Both the position numbers and the translations under genes were made by a program. The notes under the pieces are model-generated. The model searched no databases. It was not told the origin of the DNA and was given only the letters and a program-made list of their open reading frames with translations. Below are positions 3-64,000 of a DNA stretch of 64,000 nucleotides, piece after piece. Origin of the DNA: Octopus sinensis (lineage: Eukaryota); the NCBI RefSeq assembly GCF_006345805.1, contig NC_043019.1, positions 4,897,360-4,961,359 of the forward strand. Reading direction: 5' to 3'. Position 1 is the stretch's first letter; every line of letters starts with the position of its first letter.

Positions 3-596
3 ATCTCGACCTACCATTACTGTAAGGATGCCATCAGCGATGAACTCTGCAGTGTAGTGAATGCCAACAAAGTTTCCGTCCACGATTGGGCAGTCCACCA
101 GGGAAGCTTGTTCTTCCGCCAGTTATTGTTCAAACCTGACTTTTGCGACATAGAAGTGAACAGTTCTCTCACAGCAGTCCAAAATAGTAACAAGCTCCCC
201 TGTTGGTACAAACAAAAGCTTTATTTTGATTCCTTATCGAATGCTGAGATTACAGAAGCTCTCAACTACGTTGGAAAGCATCTTGACCAGTGGTTTTCAG
301 TTGTGGGTCACGTCGATGATTACTCTGCCTCCGTCAAAATGTTTGAACATGTTTACCGGTTACCATTTTCTAAATGCCACGATTCCTCTCTGACCTTCCA
401 AGAAGAACTTAGCAATAACAACAGGGCCTACACGGTAGATCAAAGCAAAGAAACTTTAGACAAGCAAGAAGTGTTCCTTCTCAAACAGAGCGCCACTGTT
501 CAAAAAGCTTTGCACGCCGACTACAGAATCTATAATGAAGCCAAAAAGTTATACCAAATTCAAAGACAGGTTTTATTTAATCAAATAGGACATTAA
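3..596 (+). CDS. 3' terminal coding exon of a probable sulfotransferase-family protein (Sulfotransfer_2 / HS6ST-like fold); starts before the window
   Basis: Frame is open from position 3 (ISTYHYCKDAIS...) to TAA at 594-596. ISTYHY resembles the end of the 3'-PB motif (R-x-x-S-x-Y-x-Y). HLDQWFSVVGHVDDYSASVKMFEHVYRLPF and DYRIYNEAKKLY resemble conserved late motifs of Golgi sulfotransferases. Family call is by motif recall only. Confidence 0.6.
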   Translation: MSTYHYCKDAISDELCSVVNANKVSVHDWAVHQGSLFFRQLLFKPDFCDIEVNSSLTAVQNSNKLPCWYKQKLYFDSLSNAEITEALNYVGKHLDQWFSVVGHVDDYSASVKMFEHVYRLPFSKCHDSSLTFQEELSNNNRAYTVDQSKETLDKQEVFLLKQSATVQKALHADYRIYNEAKKLYQIQRQVLFNQIGH

Positions 597-1876: not shown

Positions 1877-2169
1877 TATTCTGTTGTGTCTGGGGAGAGT
1901 CATTTTCTTTTTGTGCCTTATAATATAACACACTCACTGATAAAAGTTCCACTTTTTTCTTATTTTTATTTTCCTAATATTTTCGTTGCGTCTTGCAACC
2001 TTTTCAATATTTTTCAATAGTTTTGAAGTCAAAACTATTGAAAAGGCTGCAAGACGCAACGAAAATATTAGGAAAATAAACATAAGAAAAAAGAGGAAAT
2101 TTTACCGGTGAGTGTGTTATATAATAAAGGAACAAAATGAAAATGACTTTCCCCAGACACAACAGAATA
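1877..2169. repeat. Diverged fold-back element, ~140-bp arms
   Basis: TATTCTGTTGTGTCTGGGGA... / ...TCCCCAGACACAACAGAATA; centre GTTTTGA-AGT-CAAAAC. Confidence 0.85.
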
Positions 2170-34202: not shown

Positions 34203-34875
34203 CATCATCATCATCATCACCGTCGTTTAACGTCCGTTCTCCATGCTAGCATGGATTGGACGGTTCGACCGGGGATCTCGGAAGCCAGGAGGCTGCACCA
34301 GGCTCCAGTCTGATCCGGCAGTGTTTCTACAGCTGGATGCCCTTCCTAATGCCAACCACTCCGTGAGTGTAGTTGGTGCTTTTTACGTGCCACCGGCAAC
34401 AGGTGCCAGGGGAGGCTGGCAAACGGCCACGATCATTTGGTGCTTTTTACGTGCCACCGGCACAGGGGCCAGAGGAGGCTGGCAAACGGCCACGATCAGA
34501 TTGGTGCTTTTTACTTGCTACCGGCACAGGGGCCGGGGGACGCTGGCAAACGGCCACCATCGGATTGGTGCTTTTTACGTGCCACCGGCACAGAAGCCAG
34601 CGGAGGCTGGCAACGGCCACGATCATTTGGTGCTTTTTACGTGCCACCGGCACAGGGGCCAGGGGAGGCTGGCAAATGGCCATGATCGGATTGGTGCTTT
34701 TTACGTGCCACCAGCACAGGGGCCAGGGGAGGCTGGCAAACGGCCACGATCGGATTGGTGCTTTTTACGTGCCACTGGCACAGAAGCCAGGGGAGGCTGG
34801 CAAACGGCCACGATCGGATTGGTGCTTTTTACGTGCCACCGGCACGGAAGCCAGTCAAGGCGGCGCTGGCATCGT
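34203..34875 (-). mobile_element. SINE family C with (GAT)n tail and internal 62-64-bp tandem array (8 units here); other copies at ~11395-11930, 12358-12680, 21035-21350, 28890-29128(+), 36846-37125, 43955-44320, 49827-50015, 54525-54820(+), 58370-58575, 59890-60233(+)
   Basis: GGTTGGCGTTAGGAAGGGCATCCAGC (Meta-domain-like, from recall); unit starts at 34375, 34439, 34503, 34567, 34629, 34693, 34757, 34821. Confidence 0.85.
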
Positions 34876-34981
34876 GCTACAAAAAGATCAAGAGCACTTT
34901 CCTGTCCACTTCTGAATAAGTAATAAAAAAAAAAGTCATTTTTTAATTAAGCTCAATAAACATTTTTACCTTTCTTTATAG

Positions 34982-35250: not shown

Positions 35251-35348
35251 GTAACCTGTTTGACAGTCCATGAAAACCTCAACTGGATGGCCATTGGATT
35301 TGAATGCGGCAGTGTGGTCCTTTATAAAGGAGATGTCACACGTGATCG
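35251..35348 (+). CDS. VPS11: VPS11 exon 6 (VTCLTVHENLNWMAIGFECGSVVLYKGDVTRD)
   Basis: Acceptor tttcag, donor gtttgt; 98 nt, ends in phase 2. Human VSCLTVHENLNFMAIGF...KGDITRDR. Confidence 0.97.
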
Positions 35349-35501
35349 GTTTGTAAAAAATTTTAGAATTTATTCATTGTAGAGTCACTTAATATTGTTT
35401 CTTTTATGCTTATGTATATGGTTAGTATTACATACGTATTGTAATCAAATATGAGCATTATTAAATCTCTGAATGAGATGTAAACAGTAACCGCTCGACA
35501 A

Positions 35502-35872
35502 TGTAAAGTATAATAGCCATCTCAATATGGCTAACCACAAAGGGTGGGTGTTACTGTAGCTTGTAGCCCCAGGAGATCATCGTCTCCAGCTGGCTTTAGG
35601 CACACTTTCTGTGCTCTTATAGTATTTGCAAAGGAGGCCTCCTTTTGCAAATACCATAAGAGCACAGAAAGTGTGCCTCGTCTCCAGCTGGCTTTAGGCA
35701 CACTTTCTGTGCCCTTATGGTATTTGCAAAGGAGGCCTCCTTTTGCAAATACCATAAGAGCACAGAAAGTGTGCCTAAAGCCAGCTGGAGACGATGATCT
35801 CCTGGGGCTACAAGCTACAGTAACACCCACCCTTTGTGGTTAGCCATATTGAGATCGCTAGTATACTTTACA
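35502..35872. repeat. Spacerless palindrome, ~136-bp arms, with 98-bp tandem duplication of its centre
   Basis: Arms 35502-35637 and 35736-35872 differ at 4 positions; centres GGAGG|CCTCC at 35637 and 35735. Confidence 0.95.
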
Positions 35873-36142
35873 ATAAAATATGAATTAGAGATAAAACCAC
35901 TATTAGGCAACTCAAACAGTGATAGACATAAACCAATACATAAATAACAAATAATATAAATATAATTAATATAATATATATATATAAAATATAAAATTTA
36001 AATTTTTTTAAAAATTTAATTTTATATTTTTATATATATATTATATTATATTATATTATATTATTTGTTATTTATGTATTGGTTTATGTCTATCACTGTT
36101 TGAGTTGCCTAATAGTGGTTTTATCTCTAATTTATATTTTAT
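35873..36142. repeat. Palindrome with 74-bp perfect arms and AT-rich self-complementary centre
   Basis: 35883-35956 is the exact reverse complement of 36059-36132. Confidence 0.95.
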
Positions 36143-36147
36143 ATACA

Positions 36148-36307
36148 ATAAGAGGCTTCCAAATAGGAAAGCGTTGTGCTAGAAAGAGCAGTAGAAATCT
36201 CAAAACCACAAGAAAAATGATAAATTCTCAAATATCCTTTTTCTTGTGGTTTTGAGATTTCTACTGCTCTTTCTAGCACAACGCTTTCCTATTTGGAAGC
36301 CTCTTAT
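36148..36307. repeat. Palindrome with 70-bp perfect arms and 20-nt loop
   Basis: 36148-36217 is the exact reverse complement of 36238-36307. Confidence 0.95.
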
Positions 36308-38062
36308 GAATAATATATAGTCTAATGACTAATTCGTTTTTTGTGCTAGGCCAATGGTAATAATAATTTATTATTGCCCTATGAATTATGTTTAAATATT
36401 GTTTGATAAATTTGTTCCATATTTTATGTATTTATACTGTGAAATTTGATTTAATCCTAAATCTAATTTTTCCCTGTAAGTTTGGAGCCATACTCCCTAA
36501 TATTATTATTATTATACGTATTGTAAAAGAGAAAAAGTCTCTGTCCTTAGACCTTTCGACTTGATAAAGTCAAAAGAGTTAAGGTCCTTCTGCCAGCAGT
36601 ACCTGCATCAACTTTTTCAAGTTCTCACCTGTCCTGATTCCACATAAAAAGCACTCAGTCCACTTTGCGGGGCTGTTTGTGTTAAGAAGGGCATCCAGCC
36701 ATAAAAACCTTGCTGAAACAGACACAGTAGCCTGGTATGGTCTTCTATCTGGCCGGCTCCTATCAAACCTTCCAACCCATGCCAGCATGGAAGGCAGATG
36801 TTAAACAATGATGGTGTGAATGTAGAGGGAGGTGCTGTCCACAAATCATCATCATCATCATCGTTTAACGTCCGTTTTCCATGCTGGCATGGGTTGGACA
36901 GTTCAACTGGGGTCTGGGAAGCCAGAAGGCTGCACCAGGCCCCAGTCTGATCTGGCAGTGTTTCTACGGCTGGATGCCCTTCCTAACGCCAACCACTCCG
37001 TGATTGTAGTGGGTGCTTTTTATGTGCCACCTGCACAGGTGCCAGACGAGGCTGGCAAACGGCCACGATCGGATGGTGCTTTTTATGTGCCACTGGCACG
37101 GGGGCCAGACGAGGCTGGCAACAACCCATTTGTTACTGTATTTCTGTTGAGATGCTCTGTATTTCTGTCAATCAATTTTAAATATAACAAGGAATTTAGT
37201 GAAACAACTTAGTTATCATTAAGCTGGTGCTAGGAACATAAATCGTGACTAAGACTTCGTGGAAGATTTTAATTCAAAACTTATGGAAACAAGACATTTG
37301 TACTACAGGGCTAAAGCCGGTTTCAGCCGAGTTGGTATCAAAAGGGTTAAAAGATAGGTGACAGTGGTAAAGATGGCAGGAGTGGATTGGACCCCTATAA
37401 GCTTGTAAATCAGACAAGGGCAGTTGAAATCAACTAATCCCCCTCCCCTTAAAATTGCTGGCCTTGTGCCACAAACTCATTTCTGAGTTTGAATCCTGCC
37501 ATGTTGAGCTTTGTCTTTCATTCCTCCAGGATCAATAAAATAAGGGGCCAGTCAAGTAATGGAACTGATTTAATCAATTAACTATCCTTGTGTCTATGTT
37601 AACGATAATTATTATTTGGTATTTCTTATGCTTTACCATGTTCTGGGTTCAAATCTCACTTAAATCAACTTCGCCTGTCATCTTGTCAAGCTTGATGAAA
37701 TAGAATACCTATTTCTTTACTACCCACAAGGGGCTAAACACAGAGGGGACAAACAAGGACAGACAAACGGATTGAGTCAATTATATCGACCCCAGTGCGT
37801 AACTGGTACTTATTTAATTGGCCCCGAAAGGATGAAAGGCAAAGTCGACCTCGGCGTAATTTGAACTCAGAACGTAATGACAGACGAAATACGGCTACGC
37901 ATTTCGCCCAGCGTGCTAACGTTTCTGCCAGCTCGCCGTCTTCCAAGCTTGATAAAATAGAATACCAGTCAAGTACTGGGACTTATATAAGTGACTAACT
38001 TCGTCCTCACAAATTTAGGCCATTATGTGTTGTTAAGTCACCTATCTCCTTCGACATTTCAG

Positions 38063-38799: not shown

Positions 38800-39381
38800 G
38801 TGTCTTGGCATCACTCAGCAAGACTTTTGTTAGCCGCTCTCCAGCCATCTATTTAAAACTGTATACAGCTATGGTACGACCACACTTGGAATTCGCATCA
38901 TCAGTTTGGAACCCCTATCTTGCTCAGAACATTGACCTCCTGGAATCTGTCCAGAGACGTGCAACCAAACGCATACCCTCCATCAGACACCTACCATATT
39001 CTGAGCACCTTGTTTTCCTGGGCATGGATTCACTGAAGCTCTGGCGTCTGGCGACGGACTTGGTAAACACCCACAAAGTTATCAACCACCTCACCAACAA
39101 CAACACTGAACACCTTTTTGATCTCCATGTGTCTAACACACGTGGACATGCCTACAAAGTCAGAAAACAACACAGCTCCCATGACTTTCGGAAATATTTT
39201 TTCACGCTCAGAGTTGCTGAAGCATGGAATAAACTGCCTGCGTCAGTTGTTGACTGCCATGACACTGCATCCTTTAAGGCCCTCATGCTTTCCAAAATCC
39301 GCCGAAACTACACCTGATTATATATACACTTTAGATGAGTTGTAGTGCACCTGAGCACTGTACACAATTATTATTATTATT
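38800..39381 (+). mobile_element. CR1-clade LINE 3' end (ORF2 C-terminus + (ATT)n tail)
   Basis: LYTAMVRPHLEFASSVWNPY...LESVQRRATK...TRGHAYK...FFTLRVAEAWNKLP is a typical CR1 ORF2 C-terminus; ends gtgcacctgagcactgtacacaattattattatt. Confidence 0.92.
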
Positions 39382-45701: not shown

Positions 45702-46473
45702 GTTTGTGGCTTTCCACTATTAAGTCGGGAATGAATTATACTGTATAACACGATTTTTGCCCCTGGGTGGCAATTGTTATTCCTTATTTGCTGACCCCTA
45801 GAAAGTATGAAAAACGGCTAATGTTTCCTTCAGATTTTGCTTTTGTTACTTTTATTCAAACCCCAAAGAATCTCTCTCAACACATGGCTATGATGCTCCC
45901 CCACTACACCAGCTCATCAGAGATGCACATATTGTCAGCCACTAGGGGACTTGCTCAAGTGGTTATGGTCAAGCAACTGGTCAGCAAATCTGTAGTATTG
46001 AGCAGAATATTTTCTATAATGATATTTCTGCTTGAGCAACTCAGTGCTGAATCTGTCTGAAACGTAATGGAAAATAGGTCAGTTTGAAAACATTGATGTC
46101 CAGGTCACAAAAGTAAAGTTTAAAAGGAACAGCAGTCATTTCCTTTGATTTCTAGATAGATGCAAATAAAACAACACTTATTGACCAAAGACACAAAAAA
46201 AAAATATTTGTTATACCACTGTATAACAAATATTTTTTCTGCAAAGATTTCTTAATGCAATTATAAGCACCACATTAAGACCGGAATCATCAAAGGACGA
46301 CATTGGCATAATGAACATATTGTTAATGGATGGGGGTTAACATTTAATGTACCGGACAAAAAGATATTTAATCGATTTTAAGTTCTACAATTTGTAAAGA
46401 AAAAAATCCAATTTATTTGAAGATGTACTTACATAGCAAGTGACCTGATCTGAGATCGTGTGCTGGAACGAAA

Positions 46474-46762
46474 ACAATTGCAGCGTGGAAGATGTTTATA
46501 AAGCCATTTAAGAAACACACAAAACCGTTAGATTCACTTCAACATTTAAGTTTAATTTTCCAAAATATTTTCGTCGCTTTGTGACTGCGACCTGTTCACT
46601 GACAAAAACTTTGAGATGCAGCACGAAGTTTTGTCAGTGAACAGGTTGCGGTCTCAAAGCGACGAAAATATTTTGGAAAATTAAATTTAAATGTCGAAGT
46701 GAATCTAACGGTTTTTGTGTGTTTCTTAAATGGCTTATAAACACCTTCCACGCTGCAATTGT
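46474..46762. repeat. Fold-back element, ~136-bp arms (~95% identical), short loop
   Basis: ACAATTGCAGCGTGGAAG...CACTGACAAAA / TTTTGTCAGTG...CTTCCACGCTGCAATTGT; loop sequence recurs at ~29555-29580. Confidence 0.9.
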
Positions 46763-47052
46763 TCAATTTGTTTGTTATAACGATTAAGTGATCGGGGAGG
46801 GGGGAGAAAGCAATGGAGGCAACTTCGAAATCTCTGTTAATTAAAAATTGGAAGGGAACATTGAGTAGGGAGTGAGTTTGACCTTTTGCTGTGTACATAT
46901 GCTTTTTGAAACTGCTATAAAGTTTCAAATTCTTTGGGAGTTAAATTGACAAATAGAATTCAACCTTTCTTTTTGAAACCATTATGTTTATTACCTTTTT
47001 GTATTTGATTATTTAATTATATTTTTATTCTTTTTTTTTCTTTTCATTTCAG

Positions 47053-53384: not shown

Positions 53385-53782
53385 TCTTTATATATAAAAG
53401 TGAAGTTGTGTGGTGTCTGTCTCCTACAAATTAGATTCCTAACTACTCCCACATTTTGCGGTGCAGTTTAACCAAAACCGGGTATCTTATAGTCGTGATT
53501 CATATCGAGCCCTTCTGGGTATTAGCGCGCGTCTACGATGAGTCTACGATTTTAAAAAAAATTTACCATCATTTTTTTCCATTTTAATGCATTTTTTCGC
53601 TATTATATAAGGGAAGTAACTCTCTAAAAGTTTATTATTAAATCTCAGAGCGTAAAAAGCTACAGTAACCCCCCCCCTTTGTGGTTAGCCATATTGAGAT
53701 GGCTATTATACTTTACATCTCTAAAAATGCTTATATAGTTATTTCCCTTACAAACCCGAGCAACGCCGGGCGATACTGCTAG
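53385..53782 (+). mobile_element. Helitron H1 carrying an 88-bp insertion
   Basis: TC...hairpin...CTAG, inserted at AT. Confidence 0.85.
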
Positions 53783-55785: not shown

Positions 55786-57320
55786 ACATAACAATAACTC
55801 TGAGCACCTTTTCAAACTCCACCTGTCTAACACCCGTGGACATGTTTACAAAGTCAGAAAACAGCACAGCTCCCATAACTTTCGGAAACATTTTTTCATG
55901 CTAAGAGTTGCTGAAGCATGGAACTGACTGCCGGCATCAGTTCTTAGTTGTCGGAGCACTGCATCCATCAAAACTTCCATGCTTCCTGAGATTCGCCAAC
56001 ACTACACCTGATTTTCTCCCCTCCATACACACACTGAAGCATGGAACAGACTGCCGGCATCAGTTGTTAGTTGTCGGAGCACTGCATCCTTCAAAACTTC
56101 CATGCTTCCTGAGATTTGCCAACACTACACCTGATTTTCTCCCCTCCATACACACGCTGATGCATGGAACAAACTGCCGGCATCAGTTGTTAGTTGTCGG
56201 AGCACTGCATCCTTCAAAACTTCCATGCTTCCTGAGATTCGCCAACACTACACCTGATTTTCTCCCCTCCATACACACACAAGCATGTATCTGACTCATA
56301 CACTGTTCCCTTCCCAGACATTTGTACATTACTGCATATGCTTTATACACACTTTCTGACAAGTTGTGAGGCACCTGAGCACTATATACAATAATTTCAT
56401 TATTATTATTCCTGAGATTCGCCAACACTACACCTGATCTTTTCCCCCCTCCATACACACGCAAGCATGTATCTGACTCATACACTGTTCGCTTTCCCAA
56501 CATTTCTACATTACTGCATATGCTTTATACACACTTTTTGACAAGTTGTGGTGCACCTGAGCACTGTATACAATAATTTCATTATTATTATCCCTGAGAT
56601 TCGCCAACACTACACCTGATTTTCTCCCCTCCATACACACGCAAGCATGTATCTGACTCATACACTGTTCCCTTCCCAGACATTTGTACATTACTGCATA
56701 TGCTTTATACACACTTTCTGACAAGTTGTGAGGCACCTGAGCACTATATACAATAATTTCATTATTATTATTCCTGAGATTCGCCAACACTACACCTGAT
56801 TTTCTCCCCTCCATACACACGCAAGCATGTATCTGACTCATACACTGTTCCCTTCCCAGACATTTGTACATTACTGCATATGCTTTATACACACTTTCTG
56901 ACAAGTTGTGAGGCACCTGAGCACTGTATACAATAATTTCATTATTATTATTCCTGAGATTCGCCAACACTACACCTGATCTTTTCCCCCCTCCATACAC
57001 ACGCAAGCATGTATCTGACTCATACACTGTTCACTTTCTCGACATTTGTACATTACTGCATATGCTTTATACACACTTTCTGACAAGTTGTGAGGCACCT
57101 GAGCACTATATACAATAATTTCATTATTATTATTCCTGAGATTCGCCAACACCACACCTGATCTTTTCCCCCCTCCATACACACGCAAGCATGTATCTGA
57201 CTCATACACTGTTCGCTTTCCCAACATTTCTACATTACTGCATATGCTTTATACACACTTTTTGACAAGTTGTGGTGCACCTGAGCACAGTATACAATAA
57301 TTTCATTATTATTATTATTA
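55786..57320 (+). repeat. CR1 3' end amplified in tandem: 3 x 123-bp unit followed by 6 x ~180-bp unit
   Basis: cctgagattcgccaac recurs at 55985, 56108, 56231, 56411, ~56592, 56773, 56953 and 57135. Confidence 0.93.
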
Positions 57321-60942: not shown

Positions 60943-60947
60943 TTTTT

Positions 60948-60995
60948 TATTATTATTATTAATTATTATTATTATTACTATTATTATTATTATTA
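60948..60995. repeat. (TAA/TTA)n microsatellite between the two Dong elements
   Basis: Directly visible; two interruptions. Confidence 0.9.
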
Positions 60996-63900
60996 CTTTA
61001 TTTTTCTTCTTTCAAATTTGCTTTCATTTCTTGCCGAGTGTCTTCCCAACTCCTAGGGCAAAGAAACTCATAGTATACATTGGTAGGCCATTAAACCAAA
61101 CTCAATAGTTCGTTCATTTTTTTTTTTTTAAGTTATATTAAAATACATGAGCAGCAACAGTTCTCACATCGACAATGCTCTTCTCAATACGTGTGATGTA
61201 CCAGTTAAGACAATCTTTTTCACTTCTTGCAGGGATGGTAAGCCAGGGATCATTCTCATATAATTTTCGGTTCCCTTCTTGATCATTCCTAGTGCTCCTA
61301 CGATCACTGGTATTGTAACCGCTTTGAGATGCCACATTTTCTCAATTTCAATGAGTAGGTCTTTATATTTTCTGAGCTTGTCAAACTCTTTCGCTGAGAT
61401 ATTATGATCACAGGGGATGCTCATGTCGATCAATAAGCAAACTTTATTGTTTTGGTCTTTCACAACAATATCTGGTTTATTGGCCTTGATGGTTCGGTCT
61501 GTATGTACTGGAAAGTCCCACAGAATGGTTACATTTTCTCCTTCAGTTACAGCCTCAGGGTGGTGATCATACCACTTGTCGGCAGTTTTGATATTGTAAT
61601 GCCGACTTATGAGCCAGTGGAGATATTGGCCAACTCTGTCATGTCTTAATTTATACTCCACTGGTGCTAAGACTTTACATCCAGAGATTAGGTGGTCCAC
61701 TGTTTCAATCATGTCGTTGCAGAATCGGCATTTTGGGTCTGCTCCATTTTTCATCACATTGGCCTGGTAGTTCCGGGTTAATAGGCTTTGATCTTGAGCA
61801 GCCAGGATGAAACCTTCGCTCTCTGCTTTTAGCCCTGAGCTCCGTAGCCACTGATGGTTAACATCAGCTTGTTTGCTGCGGGCCACATATTTGCCGTGCA
61901 GAGGTTTCTCCTCCCACCTATCAGCCAATTGCTCGTGCGCTTTTTTTGTTGCCATTATTTTCACCTTCTTTGCAACAATAGTTGCCGTACTTCCCTCGGG
62001 TTGTTCAGTTTGGGTATCCTGCACGAGATCAATAGCAAATTTTTTGCTTTCCTTTATGATAGAATGAAGCTTCTTTCGTCTCTCGTGATTTTCCACGAGC
62101 TTTAGCATCCAGTCATTCGTTATATCGAGATATTTGGCCAGTCCAATTGTAGTTGTTTTGTAAGCTAGTTCAAATTGGATCAGGCCTCGACCTCCTTGGG
62201 CTCTGGGAAGGTAAAGGCGATCTACGTCTGCCTTTGGGTGGTGCATCCTATTACAACTCAGCAGCTTGCGTATTTTCCTATCTATATTCTTTACTTCACT
62301 CATGTTCCAGTTCAACACATTGTAGCTATAAGTAACAACTGGAACTGCTAAGGAATTTATAGCTAACACCTTGTTACGTGCATTAAGTTCAGATTTCAGG
62401 ACTTCACGAACTCTCCTATAACATTCCTTCCTGATCTTCTCTTTCATGCTTGCATGCTGAATACCAGAGCCTTCATTTATCCCTAACTATTTGTATGTTT
62501 GTTCTTGCTCAAGCTCTCTTATGACTGTGTCAACATCTAACACGACTGAATTTGTGGTCTTCACTTTCCCTTTCTGGAAAGTGGCCTTGGCACACTTCTC
62601 AAGTCCAAACTCCATCCCGATGTCATCGCTGAATGCTTTCACAGTGCGCAATAGGCCTTCAAGTTCATTATTGTCTTTACCATAAAGTTTTAAGTCATCC
62701 ATATAAAATAGATGGCTTATTTTTTTATTGGCAATTTTATACCCATACCCTGTTCTGTTTAATTCACTTGTAAGGGGTATTAGGGCTATGCAGAATATTA
62801 AAGGTGAAAGTGAGTCACCTTGAAAAATTCCACAGTTGATGTTTATATTTTCTGAGGCAAGTACTCCATTAGAGTGGTATAATTGGAGATTCGTATTCCA
62901 CAACAACATATTGTGCTTCAGGAAGTTTGAAATCACGGGGGAAATTTTGAAGATGTCCAGCGATTTCAAGATCCATGGATGCGGTATACTGTCGAAGGCC
63001 TTTTTATAGTCAATCCATGCGGAGCTGAGATTTCTGCGCTTGTTGTGACAGTTCTCAAGGATCATACGATTAATTAGCAGTTGATCTTTGCATCCGTAAG
63101 AGCCTCGGCGGCACCCTTTTTGTTCAATGGGGAAAATATCGTTCTTCTCCATGAATGCATATGTTTTCTCCGCCAGGATAGATGTTATACATGGTGGATA
63201 GACAGGTTATAGGCCGATAGTTTTTTGGAAGGTTAGTTTCGTTATTCTTTGGGAGTAGGTAAGTAATACCACTTGCTAACCATTCAGGTGTTTTCTTTGG
63301 GTCTCTCATAATTCCATTGAGCAGCTGAACTAGCTTACCGTGTGCGCATGGGAGCGATGCGAGCCAGAAATTCGGCACCCTATCTTTACCGGGGGATTTC
63401 CAATTATGGGCCTTCGTGCGTGCCTTTCTTAGGTCTGCTATTGTGATGTCTTCCCATGCTTGTTGTTGTAAATTTTGGTAGGATCCTTCAGTTTGTATAA
63501 TCCAGTCTGCATTTATGTTGTACGTCTTCTTGTCACTCCAAATCCTTCTCCAAAAGTTTTGAACTTCTTCCATGGGAGGGCGGTCTTTAACGGTTACTTT
63601 CTCCTTCCCTATTTCTCTGTAGAATTTTTTGGCATTGGATGTGAACAGCTTATTTTGCTTGTAAAACTTGTTTCTCTTCTCAAATCTTCGTATTCTTTGG
63701 GCTTTTGCTTGGACTTTTTGTTTCAGCGTTTCTTTTATTGATATCAGTTCTTCTCTTGGTGAGGATCCAAATTTTCTCTTCATCTTTCTTCCTGTTCTGG
63801 ATCTTACATCATTTCCACATATTAGTTCATTTAATATTGATATTTCCCCTCTCATAAATTCAATCTCTTTTTCAATTTTACTTCTCCAGGTTTGATTTCT

Positions 63901-64000
63901 TCCCAGGTTTGGTTTTCTTTGTTTCTTCGGGGGCATACAGCTGGTTTCAATTGCCCTAGCAGAAGCGTAAATAATTTCATTTAACTCAGTAAAATCAGGT
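60996..64000 (-). mobile_element. R4/Dong-clade non-LTR retrotransposon (RT + CCHC finger + restriction-like endonuclease), disabled; runs off the window
   Basis: ORF pieces 63124-63936, 62487-63152, 61164-62447 contain RT motifs (YRPITCL, GIFQGDSLSP, YMDD), CRFC...HLISGC and the RLE motif KPDIVV...IDMSIP. One frameshift near 63170 and one in-frame TAG at 62487. The 3' end abuts a (TAA)n tract. Confidence 0.93.

What the first reader, a model, noticed from the sequence alone, without database searches (positions are those of the whole stretch)
35432..36585. Three unrelated long near-perfect palindromes packed back-to-back in VPS11 intron 6
Seen: P-I 35502-35872 (136-bp arms, no spacer, 4 differences), P-II 35873-36142 (74-bp perfect arms), P-III 36148-36307 (70-bp perfect arms, 20-nt loop), plus smaller hairpins near 36355-36380 and 36545-36585. 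The block starts ~150 nt after the exon 6 donor and is bracketed by a 13-bp direct repeat ATACGTATTGTAA (35432-35444, 36514-36526) preceded on the right by a (TAT)n run. Known: spacerless palindromes extrude cruciforms and are unstable, and long intronic dsRNA is an ADAR substrate (coleoids edit heavily). Inference: a composite of hairpin-type non-autonomous elements that target each other, with arms kept identical by snap-back synthesis or conversion; in pre-mRNA it would form about 280 bp of duplex.
Basis: partly seen in the sequence, partly recalled or inferred. Interest (0 to 1): 0.75.

Follow-up and report, generated by a model that had tools for sequence, protein, structure and literature searches.

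The report
Nested mobile-element hairpins in an intron
Three long DNA palindromes packed together in an intron of the housekeeping gene VPS11 are real, but they look like layered debris of jumping-gene insertions (one of them probably made by a copying enzyme folding back on itself) and show no sign of being a purpose-built structure.

Summary
The three palindromes, the 13-bp direct repeat and the (TAT)n run are all present at the stated coordinates and are far beyond chance. They lie in a 2.7-kb intron of a VPS11 homologue.

- **P-I is part of a larger mobile element.** This 420-bp element, X (35453-35872), sits inside the left arm of P-II and is flanked by a 9-bp target duplication. A second, 88-bp member of the family (53630-53717) interrupts one copy of another repeat. 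Four other copies of that repeat show the empty site, so the family's mobility is demonstrated.
- **With X removed, P-II is a 285-bp palindrome.** Its left arm starts inside the left copy of the 13-bp repeat. Its right arm ends within 3 bp of the base of P-III.
- **The whole block looks like one insertion.** The 13-bp repeat plus the abutting (TAT)5 tail is the signature of a target-primed, retroposon-type insertion spanning 35445-36513.

My best model: one retroposed insert whose 5' 140 nt were duplicated in inverted order by fold-back synthesis (P-II). That synthesis probably stalled at a pre-existing hairpin (P-III). X/P-I landed in it later.

There is no evidence for arm homogenisation, a known RNA family or a host function. 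The genome-wide copy number of each piece could not be tested. The finding is ordinary to modestly interesting.

The parts
35432..35444 (+). Left copy of the 13-bp direct repeat ATACGTATTGTAA. Proposed 5' target-site duplication of insert Z. Its last 7-8 nt (TATTGTA-A) also form the outermost part of the P-II left arm.
35445..36513 (+). Insert Z (1069 bp). Proposed single target-primed insertion that contains P-II, X/P-I, P-III, a 206-bp unique 3' region and a (TAT)n tail.
   Evidence: A perfect 13-bp duplication brackets it exactly, and a simple-repeat tail abuts the right copy. It is the only one of 9 such repeat runs in the window whose downstream flank recurs upstream.
35437..35452 (+). 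Outer 16 bp of the P-II left arm, separated from the rest of the arm by element X. It includes the left copy of X's target duplication.
   Evidence: With X removed, the P-II palindrome runs 35437..36150.
35444..35452 (+). Left 9-bp target-site duplication of X (ATCAAATAT).
   Evidence: It matches 35873-35881 at 8 of 9 positions. The uninterrupted right arm of P-II reads ATAAAATAT once.
35453..35872 (+). Element X (420 bp): a 49-bp non-palindromic left end L (35453-35501) followed by palindrome P-I (35502-35872).
   Evidence: It shares both ends with the 88-bp family member X' at 53630-53717 and has a 9-bp target duplication.
35580..35775 (+). 98-bp tandem duplication (2 copies, 98% identical) at the centre of P-I. 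Each copy is itself a 35-bp-stem hairpin.
35873..35881 (+). Right 9-bp target-site duplication of X (ATAAAATAT).
35882..36150 (+). Remainder of P-II: the rest of the left arm, the AT-rich core (centre about 36008) and the right arm, which ends ...TATACAATA at 36150.
36148..36307 (+). P-III: perfect 70-bp arms and a 20-nt loop, bounded by TA on both sides. Its stem base lies within 3 nt of the end of the P-II right arm.
36308..36500 (+). Unique AT-rich 3' region of insert Z. No other copy exists in the window.
36501..36515 (+). (TAT)5 simple-repeat tail of Z, directly abutting and overlapping by 2 nt the right 13-bp repeat.
36514..36526 (+). Right copy of the 13-bp direct repeat. Proposed 3' target-site duplication of Z.
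53621..53726 (+). Second member of the X family. X' (53630-53717, 88 bp) is flanked by a perfect 9-bp duplication TCTCTAAAA and is inserted in a copy of repeat family Y.
   Evidence: Alignment A1: four other Y copies are uninterrupted at this site.

Best explanation
The block is layered mobile-element debris in an intron, built in at least two and probably three steps.

Step 1 (inferred). A retroposon-type RNA was copied into the intron by target-primed reverse transcription. This left a 13-bp target duplication and a (TAT)n tail (insert Z, 35445-36513). At the far end of the new cDNA, an AT-rich self-complementary stretch folded back and primed synthesis on the cDNA itself. About 140 nt were re-copied in inverted order. 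The new strand stopped at the base of a 70-bp hairpin already present in the insert (P-III). It was then joined to the upstream target end through 7 nt of microhomology (TATTGTA). This made palindrome P-II.

Step 2 (shown). A 420-bp non-autonomous element X then inserted 8 bp inside the left arm of P-II, making a 9-bp target duplication. X consists of a 49-bp left end plus palindrome P-I. X belongs to a family with a second, internally deleted member in the window.

Step 3 (shown as a structure; timing unknown). The centre of P-I carries a 98-bp tandem duplication.

Nothing indicates a host function. As a by-product, the VPS11 pre-mRNA would carry three hairpins with stems of roughly 185, 140 and 70 bp. 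These are plausible substrates for dsRNA-binding enzymes (inferred, untested).
For: Mobility of X:
- X' at 53630-53717 has the same 5' start and the same 3' terminus (...CTTTACA) as X. It is flanked by a perfect 9-bp duplication, and four paralogous copies of the host repeat Y show the empty site.
- At the focal locus, the 9-mers flanking X match at 8 of 9 positions. The right arm of P-II serves as the uninterrupted paralogue. Removing X and one duplicate restores a continuous 285-bp palindrome.
- X is present in one arm only, so it inserted after P-II formed.

Z as a target-primed insertion:
- An exact 13-mer brackets 35445-36513, and the right copy follows directly on (TAT)5.
- Other repeats in the window end in (ATT)n tails.
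- Of 9 such repeat runs, only this one has its downstream flank repeated upstream (13 nt; the others 10 nt or fewer). My rough chance estimate for this is about 1e-3.

P-II as a fold-back product:
- Its left arm begins inside the left duplication (7 perfect nt, then a 1-nt bulge exactly at the junction).
- If the 13-mer is a true target duplication, a later independent insertion of P-II would need its first 6 nt to equal the target by chance.
- Its right arm ends within 3 nt of the P-III stem base.
- No other copy of P-II or P-III exists in 64 kb.
- Precedent: L1 target-primed ends that self-anneal and prime synthesis give inverted duplications and foldbacks (bioRxiv 10.1101/2024.12.14.628481).

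No arm homogenisation: X' agrees with the left arm of P-I at both outer-arm differences.
Against: - The retroposon identity of Z rests on structure alone. Its 3' region matches no LINE or SINE in the window, and no genome-wide search was possible.
- The reported fold-back duplications at L1 insertion sites come from cultured-cell clones and cancer genomes. They are not reported there as germline-fixed events. A 140-nt full overlap is not the classical twin-priming outcome.
- P-II, P-III and a third palindrome at 1877-2169 are all TA-bounded. Four of the five palindromes in the window are 273-293 bp long. Both facts hint at a class of palindromic cut-and-paste elements instead.
- The class of X is unresolved. 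It has a 9-bp duplication, but its two ends are not inverted repeats of each other.
- The order of P-III relative to the fold-back is inferred only from position.
- No reads were available to exclude assembly error.
Confidence: 0.5

Rival explanations
1. Three independent hairpin-type miniature DNA transposons nested by successive cut-and-paste insertions. P-II (TA duplication) came first. X/P-I went into its left arm (9-bp duplication). P-III went into the TA at its right end. The 13-bp repeat and the (TAT)n run are coincidences.
For: P-II, P-III and the 1877-2169 palindrome begin with TA and end with TA. Palindrome sizes cluster at 273-293 bp. Palindromic TA-flanked miniature transposons are well known, e.g. 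Made1 (PMC1784062). Tc1/mariner and hAT elements are abundant in cephalopod genomes, if that is the source (PMC6962438). Three of five hairpin elements lie within 711 bp, which has P about 0.004 under random placement, so some insertion preference would be needed.
Against: TA is self-complementary, so it cannot be told apart from two more palindrome base pairs. No second copy of P-II or P-III exists in the window. This model leaves three things unexplained: an exact 13-mer bracketing the block, a simple-repeat tail abutting its right copy (unique among 9 runs), and the overlap of the left 13-mer with the P-II terminus. P-III landing on the very dinucleotide next to P-II is improbable without targeting.
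Confidence: 0.2
2. Z is a retroposed copy of a source locus that already carried a complete P-II palindrome (a resident miniature transposon). The new copy happened to be 5'-truncated at a 7-8-nt microhomology lying at the outer end of the P-II left arm. No fold-back synthesis was involved.
For: This has the same target duplication and tail evidence as the best model. 5' truncation with junctional microhomology is the common outcome of target-primed insertion (established knowledge of L1).
Against: The truncation point must fall, by chance, within the last 8 bp of a 285-bp palindrome so that the palindrome still looks complete. It does not explain why the right arm ends at the base of P-III.
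Confidence: 0.12
3. The palindromes are a selected RNA-level device: an intronic long-hairpin locus that yields small RNAs, recruits ADAR, or modulates VPS11 splicing.
For: The predicted RNA structure is extremely stable (-678 kcal/mol for 35432-36526; z-scores -28 to -45). The block begins 84 nt after the splice donor. A-to-I editing in animals mainly targets dsRNA from young repeats (PMC9989829).
Against: No Rfam family reaches its threshold. The sub-threshold hits are to dozens of unrelated miRNA models on both strands, which is the generic response to any perfect hairpin (the same caveat appears in PMC6962438). The arms are near-identical because they are young, not because of compensatory conservation. 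The pieces have insertion signatures. No expression or conservation data were available. Being edited would be a consequence, not evidence of a function.
Confidence: 0.05
4. Assembly artefact: fold-back chimeric reads or a consensus error created palindromes that do not exist in the animal.
For: Nothing positive. Reads could not be inspected. P-III has perfectly identical arms.
Against: There are three unrelated palindromes of 160-371 bp, not one read-scale fold-back. The P-I and P-II arms carry substitutions and indels. P-I contains a diverged 98-bp tandem duplication. X has a target duplication and an independent family member elsewhere. The block is embedded between intact exons with proper splice sites.
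Confidence: 0.03

Closest known systems
5' inversions (twin priming) and inverted duplications/foldbacks at LINE-1 target-primed insertion sites
   Same: Both have a target duplication of about 13 bp and a 3' tail abutting it. In both, an inverted segment lies at the 5' end of the insert and is joined to the target through microhomology. Self-annealing of a 3' end that then primes synthesis is the proposed source of inverted duplications (bioRxiv 10.1101/2024.12.14.628481).
   Different: Here the inverted segment fully duplicates about 140 nt of the insert itself, giving a near-spacerless palindrome. Classical twin priming inverts a different segment, with at most small overlaps. The tail is (TAT)n, not poly(A). 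The retroposon family is unidentified. The event sits in a reference assembly of an invertebrate-like genome, not in cancer genomes or cultured-cell clones.
Palindromic miniature inverted-repeat elements such as human Made1 (source of mir-548), Stowaway-like
   Same: The element consists almost entirely of two inverted arms, is TA-bounded, is often intronic, and its transcripts form very stable hairpins (PMC1784062). P-III, and formally P-II, fit this shape.
   Different: Made1 is 80 bp long with thousands of copies and a known autonomous parent (Hsmar1). For P-II and P-III no second copy, no parent and no unambiguous TA duplication could be shown. P-II overlaps a 13-bp target duplication, which a cut-and-paste origin does not explain.
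Foldback / Mutator-like elements with 9-bp target duplications (Drosophila FB; Tm1 of root-knot nematodes)
   Same: X and X' make 9-bp target duplications. X's body is a long palindrome with an internal tandem repeat. Tm1 also has asymmetric outermost motifs and nested inverted-repeat insertions (PMC3169594).
   Different: X has 49 bp of non-palindromic sequence at one end and none at the other. Its two termini show no inverted-repeat relationship. No Mutator/Phantom transposase was found in the window. A retroposon origin for X is not excluded.
Inverted repeat pairs in introns (e.g. inverted Alu) as ADAR substrates
   Same: Both are young repeat-derived intramolecular dsRNA in pre-mRNA, the main class of A-to-I editing target across animals (PMC9989829).
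   Different: Here each duplex comes from a single palindromic unit with a loop of 20 nt or less, not from two separate repeat copies. Editing was not tested.

Membership tests
Non-LTR retroposon insertion by target-primed reverse transcription (insert Z) | Target-site duplication of variable length (typically 7-20 bp) flanking the insert exactly | tested here: met
   The exact 13-mer ATACGTATTGTAA lies at 35432-44 and 36514-26, with no other exact copy in the window.
Non-LTR retroposon insertion by target-primed reverse transcription (insert Z) | Simple-repeat or poly(A) tail at the 3' end, abutting the 3' duplication | tested here: met
   (TAT)5 at 36501-15 runs into the right 13-mer. Other repeats in the window end in (ATT)n. 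This is the only one of 9 runs whose downstream flank recurs upstream.
Non-LTR retroposon insertion by target-primed reverse transcription (insert Z) | Sequence homology of the insert to a LINE or SINE family | tested here: not met
   There is no match for 36308-36513 or for the P-II arms elsewhere in the 64-kb window. A genome-wide test was not possible.
5'-inverted / fold-back retroposed copy | Inverted segment at the 5' end, joined to the upstream target through microhomology | tested here: met
   The left arm of P-II starts with TATTGTA inside the left duplication. A 1-nt bulge lies exactly at the junction.
Miniature inverted-repeat transposon, Tc1/mariner-type (P-II, P-III) | TA target-site duplication | tested here: inconclusive
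   TA is present at both ends of P-II and P-III. But TA is self-complementary and cannot be told apart from palindrome extension.
Miniature inverted-repeat transposon, Tc1/mariner-type (P-II, P-III) | Multiple dispersed copies with unrelated flanks | tested here: not met
   There are no further copies in the window. The source genome is absent from the searchable collections.
Miniature inverted-repeat transposon, Tc1/mariner-type (P-II, P-III) | Terminal repeats matching those of an autonomous transposase-encoding element | not testable with these tools
   No repeat library or source genome is available, and no DNA transposase ORF exists in the window.
Foldback / Mutator-like element (X, X') | 9-bp target-site duplication | tested here: met
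   X' has a perfect TCTCTAAAA duplication and four empty paralogous sites. X has ATCAAATAT / ATAAAATAT, with the right arm of P-II as the empty paralogue.
Foldback / Mutator-like element (X, X') | Long terminal inverted repeats reaching both ends of the element | tested here: not met
   The 49-bp left end L has no significant similarity to the P-I arm in either orientation (shuffle p 0.35-0.8). The palindrome reaches only the right end.
Foldback / Mutator-like element (X, X') | Related autonomous element encoding a Mutator/Phantom-type transposase | not testable with these tools
   None is in the window, and the genome is not searchable.
Known structured RNA family (miRNA precursor etc.) | Score at or above the Rfam gathering threshold | tested here: not met
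   There are 0 matches at gathering thresholds. At E<=1 there are only sub-threshold hits to about 30 unrelated miRNA models on both strands.

The most novel reading that the evidence does not exclude
In this genome, target-primed retroposition itself may manufacture long near-perfect palindromes. The new cDNA would fold back at an AT-rich end and re-copy itself until it stalls at the next stable hairpin. Existing hairpins would then seed new palindromes directly beside them. This would explain the back-to-back packing. It could also account for palindromic units such as P-I and P-III, as products of earlier rounds that were then propagated as part of longer transcripts. It would provide a steady germline source of intronic dsRNA.
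Probability: 0.15. Interest if true: 0.6.

Novelty: new member of a known kind. Interest (0 to 1): 0.35.

Why it matters
If the model holds, this locus is a clean germline example of three things. A retroposition event created a 285-bp palindrome by fold-back synthesis. A resident hairpin fixed where the new palindrome ends. Another element then landed in the fresh palindrome. That links two areas usually treated apart: the origin of long palindromes, which are fragile at the DNA level, and the supply of long intronic dsRNA for editing or RNA-sensing pathways.

If instead all three are ordinary palindromic miniature transposons, the locus is routine repeat annotation. Either way it cautions against reading near-perfect arms as evidence of active homogenisation or of function.

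Tried and rejected
External copies and orthologues. All attempts failed:
- Metagenome scans with a conserved P-I 22-mer and with the abundant Y-repeat 24-mer.
- Scans of bacterial/archaeal genomes and viral contigs.
- A protein-space search with the 99-aa ORF inside P-I.
- An exact look-up of 10 ORFs in and around the block.
- A search with the 179-aa ORF at the window start, meant to identify the organism.
- A VPS11 search, which returned only distant partial proteins (55-61% identity: spider, annelid, sea spider), so no orthologous intron could be fetched.

Ideas rejected:
- The 13-bp repeat extends to 19 bp. This was my own misalignment, withdrawn after re-indexing.
- The right 13-mer belongs to the neighbouring SINE core. 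SINE homology starts only at about 36626.
- L is a degenerate copy of the P-I arm, which would give X true terminal inverted repeats. The similarity is not significant.
- The other two palindromes (1877-2169, 46473-46763) carry the same long-duplication signature. They do not.
- A tRNA-derived SINE origin. No tRNA-like sequence exists in the window.
- miRNA family membership.
- A 206-bp retroposon inserted first and P-II arrived later as a transposon. This would need the first 6 nt of P-II to equal the target by chance, and the displaced target bases are missing on the other side.
Full report
**Observation**

The region was read directly and scanned for repeats. Three long inverted repeats are present.
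- P-I lies at 35502-35872.
- P-II lies at 35873-36142.
- P-III lies at 36148-36307.

Gapped self-alignments and an ungapped hairpin scan give the details.
- P-III has perfect 70-bp arms and a 20-nt loop.
- P-II has a perfect 75-bp stretch in each outer arm, one mismatch at arm position 10, and an AT-rich, microsatellite-like core with five single-base indels.
- P-I is palindromic over all 371 bp. It consists of a 273-bp spacerless palindrome (136-bp arms, four differences) plus a 98-bp tandem duplication at its centre (35580-35677 / 35678-35775, 98% identical).

The arms of the three are unrelated to each other. As RNA they fold at -331, -162 and -126 kcal/mol, with z-scores of -45, -31 and -28. 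The whole block folds at -678 kcal/mol as three giant hairpins.

The 13-mer ATACGTATTGTAA is exact at 35432-44 and 36514-26 and occurs nowhere else in the window. (TAT)5 lies at 36501-15.

**Context**

A tblastn probe with human VPS11, recalled from memory and used only to locate exons, finds a colinear series of exons on the + strand from 28.7 kb to 59.8 kb. A search with the concatenated exons returns VPS11 proteins only. The block lies in the intron 35349-38062, which has GT..AG ends. It follows the fifth coding exon I can find.

No close relative of the protein is in the searchable collections, so the organism could not be confirmed.

**P-I is part of a larger mobile element**

The outer 61 bp of the P-I arm recur once, at 53657-53717 (97% identity), ending at the same terminus ...CTTTACA. 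That copy, X' (53630-53717, 88 bp), is flanked by a perfect 9-bp duplication, TCTCTAAAA. It sits inside a copy of an abundant repeat, which I call Y and which has six copies in the window.

Alignment A1 shows four other Y copies reading straight through the site with a single copy of the 9-mer. This is a paralogous empty site, so X' is a genuine insertion.

The 5' part of X' (ATTATTAAATCTC...GTAAA...CAGTAAC) also occurs immediately left of P-I, at 35457-35489. By analogy the focal element is X = 35453-35872: a 49-bp left end L plus P-I. The 9-mers on either side of X match at 8 of 9 positions (ATCAAATAT at 35444-52, ATAAAATAT at 35873-81).

When X and one 9-mer are removed, P-II becomes a continuous 285-bp palindrome from 35437 to 36150. 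The uninterrupted right arm of P-II therefore acts as the empty-site paralogue. X is thus shown to have inserted into the left arm of an already existing P-II.

X' looks like an internal-deletion derivative of an X-like element. The two ends of X are not inverted repeats of each other, so its class is open. Candidates are a Mutator/Foldback-like element (suggested by the 9-bp duplication) and a tail-less retroposon.

**Arm divergence**

At the two outer-arm positions where the P-I arms differ, X' agrees with the left arm. The right arm has therefore accumulated two uncorrected substitutions. There is no sign of ongoing homogenisation. The arms are similar because they are young.

**The 13-bp repeat and the tail**

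A generic test gave only weak support. About 2% of window positions have some 13-mer or longer in the same geometry, mostly microsatellites.

A sharper test gave clear support. For each of the nine (ATT)n/(AAT)n runs in the window, I asked whether the sequence directly after the run recurs within 7 kb on the other side. Only the run at 36501 does (13 nt); all others give 10 nt or fewer. Other repeats in the window end in ...CACCTGAGCACTGTAYACA...(ATT)n, so such tails are the local norm.

An exact target duplication plus an abutting simple-repeat tail is the hallmark of target-primed insertion. I therefore read 35445-36513 as one insert, Z.

**Origin of P-II**

The left arm of P-II starts inside the left 13-mer. 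TATTGTA (35437-43) pairs with TACAATA (36144-50), followed by a one-base bulge exactly at the junction.

If the 13-mer is a true target duplication, P-II cannot be a later, independent transposon. Its first six bases would have to equal the target by chance, and the displaced target bases are not found on its other side.

Two models remain.
- The source already carried the palindrome, and the copy was truncated by chance at its last 8 bp.
- The palindrome was made during insertion. In this model the cDNA end folded back at the AT-rich, locally self-complementary centre (about 36008) and re-copied about 140 nt. It was then joined to the upstream target end by the 7-nt microhomology.

The second model also explains why the right arm stops within 3 nt of the base of the P-III stem (36148-36150). 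A 70-bp hairpin in a single-stranded template is a natural stalling point. A recent study of L1 reports inverted duplications and foldbacks arising from self-annealed, extended ends at target-primed insertion sites (10.1101/2024.12.14.628481).

These steps are inferred from one locus. They are not shown.

**The rival transposon reading**

P-II, P-III and a further palindrome at 1877-2169 are all TA-bounded. Four of the five hairpin-type palindromes in the window measure 273-293 bp. This fits palindromic TA-targeting miniature transposons such as Made1 (PMC1784062).

However, TA is self-complementary and so proves nothing in a palindrome. No second copy of P-II or P-III exists in the window. 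The model also leaves the 13-mer, the tail and their overlap with P-II unexplained. The other two palindromes lack any long flanking duplication.

The clustering is real. Three of five elements within 711 bp has P about 0.004, and two of four elements landing in or at a 285-bp target has P about 1e-4. The fold-back model removes most of this coincidence.

**Function**

There are no Rfam matches at curated thresholds. A permissive scan gives sub-threshold hits to some thirty unrelated miRNA models on both strands. This is the known response of hairpin models to any inverted repeat (PMC6962438).

A-to-I editing in animals mainly targets dsRNA formed by young repeats (PMC9989829). Editing of these hairpins is therefore plausible, but it would be a consequence and not a purpose. 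It could not be tested.

At the DNA level, the central 98-bp duplication in P-I and the indels in the P-II core are the kind of centre-modifying changes expected for long palindromes. This is inference from general knowledge.

**Limits**

Every route to further copies or to an orthologous intron failed. Copy numbers, the identity of Z's retroposon family, the class of X and the empty allele all remain untested. No reads were available. The diverged arms, the target duplications and the independent family member nevertheless argue strongly against an assembly artefact.

**Verdict**

The interpretation as a composite of mobile hairpins is partly right. The structure is better explained as one retroposed insert with a fold-back 5' end, later hit by a second element. 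It is a new member of known kinds of event. It has modest interest as a tidy natural example, and more if fold-back at retroposition proves to be a general source of palindromes in this genome.

Noticed in passing
window 2240(+), 15797(-), 26145(+), 35091(+, truncated after about 40 bp), 48005(-), 53770(-): Abundant repeat family 'Y' with the conserved 5' end ACTAGCAGTATCGCCCGGCGTTGCTCGGGTTTGTAAGGGAAATAAC. It carries a 12-bp-stem hairpin, and X' inserted in the loop of that hairpin. There are six copies in 64 kb; one lies in the intron just upstream of the exon at 35251. Its class is unknown.
   Followed up: partly
window 1877-2169 and 46473-46763: Two further near-perfect palindromes of 293 and 291 bp, with short or no loops. 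They are weakly related to each other (shared AATATTTTCGTYGC motif; local score 26 against about 10 for unrelated pairs). The first is TA-bounded and the second is not. Neither has a long flanking duplication.
   Followed up: partly
window 34225-34923, 36626-36817(-), 36853-37212 and at least 12 other sites: SINE-like family (core about 190 bp, copies 70-76% identical), often followed by a 64-bp-period minisatellite (e.g. 34373-34845, 7.4 copies). The minisatellite creates long spurious ORFs. Two copies form an inverted pair at 36766-36903, just right of the block.
   Followed up: partly
window about 55900-57320: Tandem array with a spacing of about 181 bp. Each unit contains the 3' end ...CACCTGAGCACTRTATACAATAATTTC(ATT)4, the same 3' end that terminates dispersed copies at 39367 and 13477(-). 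This looks like a satellite built from a retroposon 3' end.
   Followed up: no
window 61164-63936 (-): LINE fragment with a reverse-transcriptase domain (PF00078, E=5e-22) and a weak zf-RVT match. A long (TTA)n/(ATT)n run at 60947-60995 lies at its 3' side.
   Followed up: partly
window 57-596 (+): A 179-aa ORF running in from the window start. It has no Pfam hit and no homologue in the protein collection at E<=1e-10. It may be the last exon of the upstream gene, or it may be spurious.
   Followed up: partly
window 35580-35775: The 98-bp tandem duplication at the centre of P-I turns a spacerless palindrome into a stem carrying two 35-bp sub-hairpins. This may be a centre-modifying rearrangement that stabilises a long palindrome.
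   Followed up: partly
protein collection searches: The best 120 VPS11 hits listed were all shorter than 750 aa, and none was closer than 61% identity. The source clade therefore seems to be missing from the searchable protein and contig collections.
   Followed up: no
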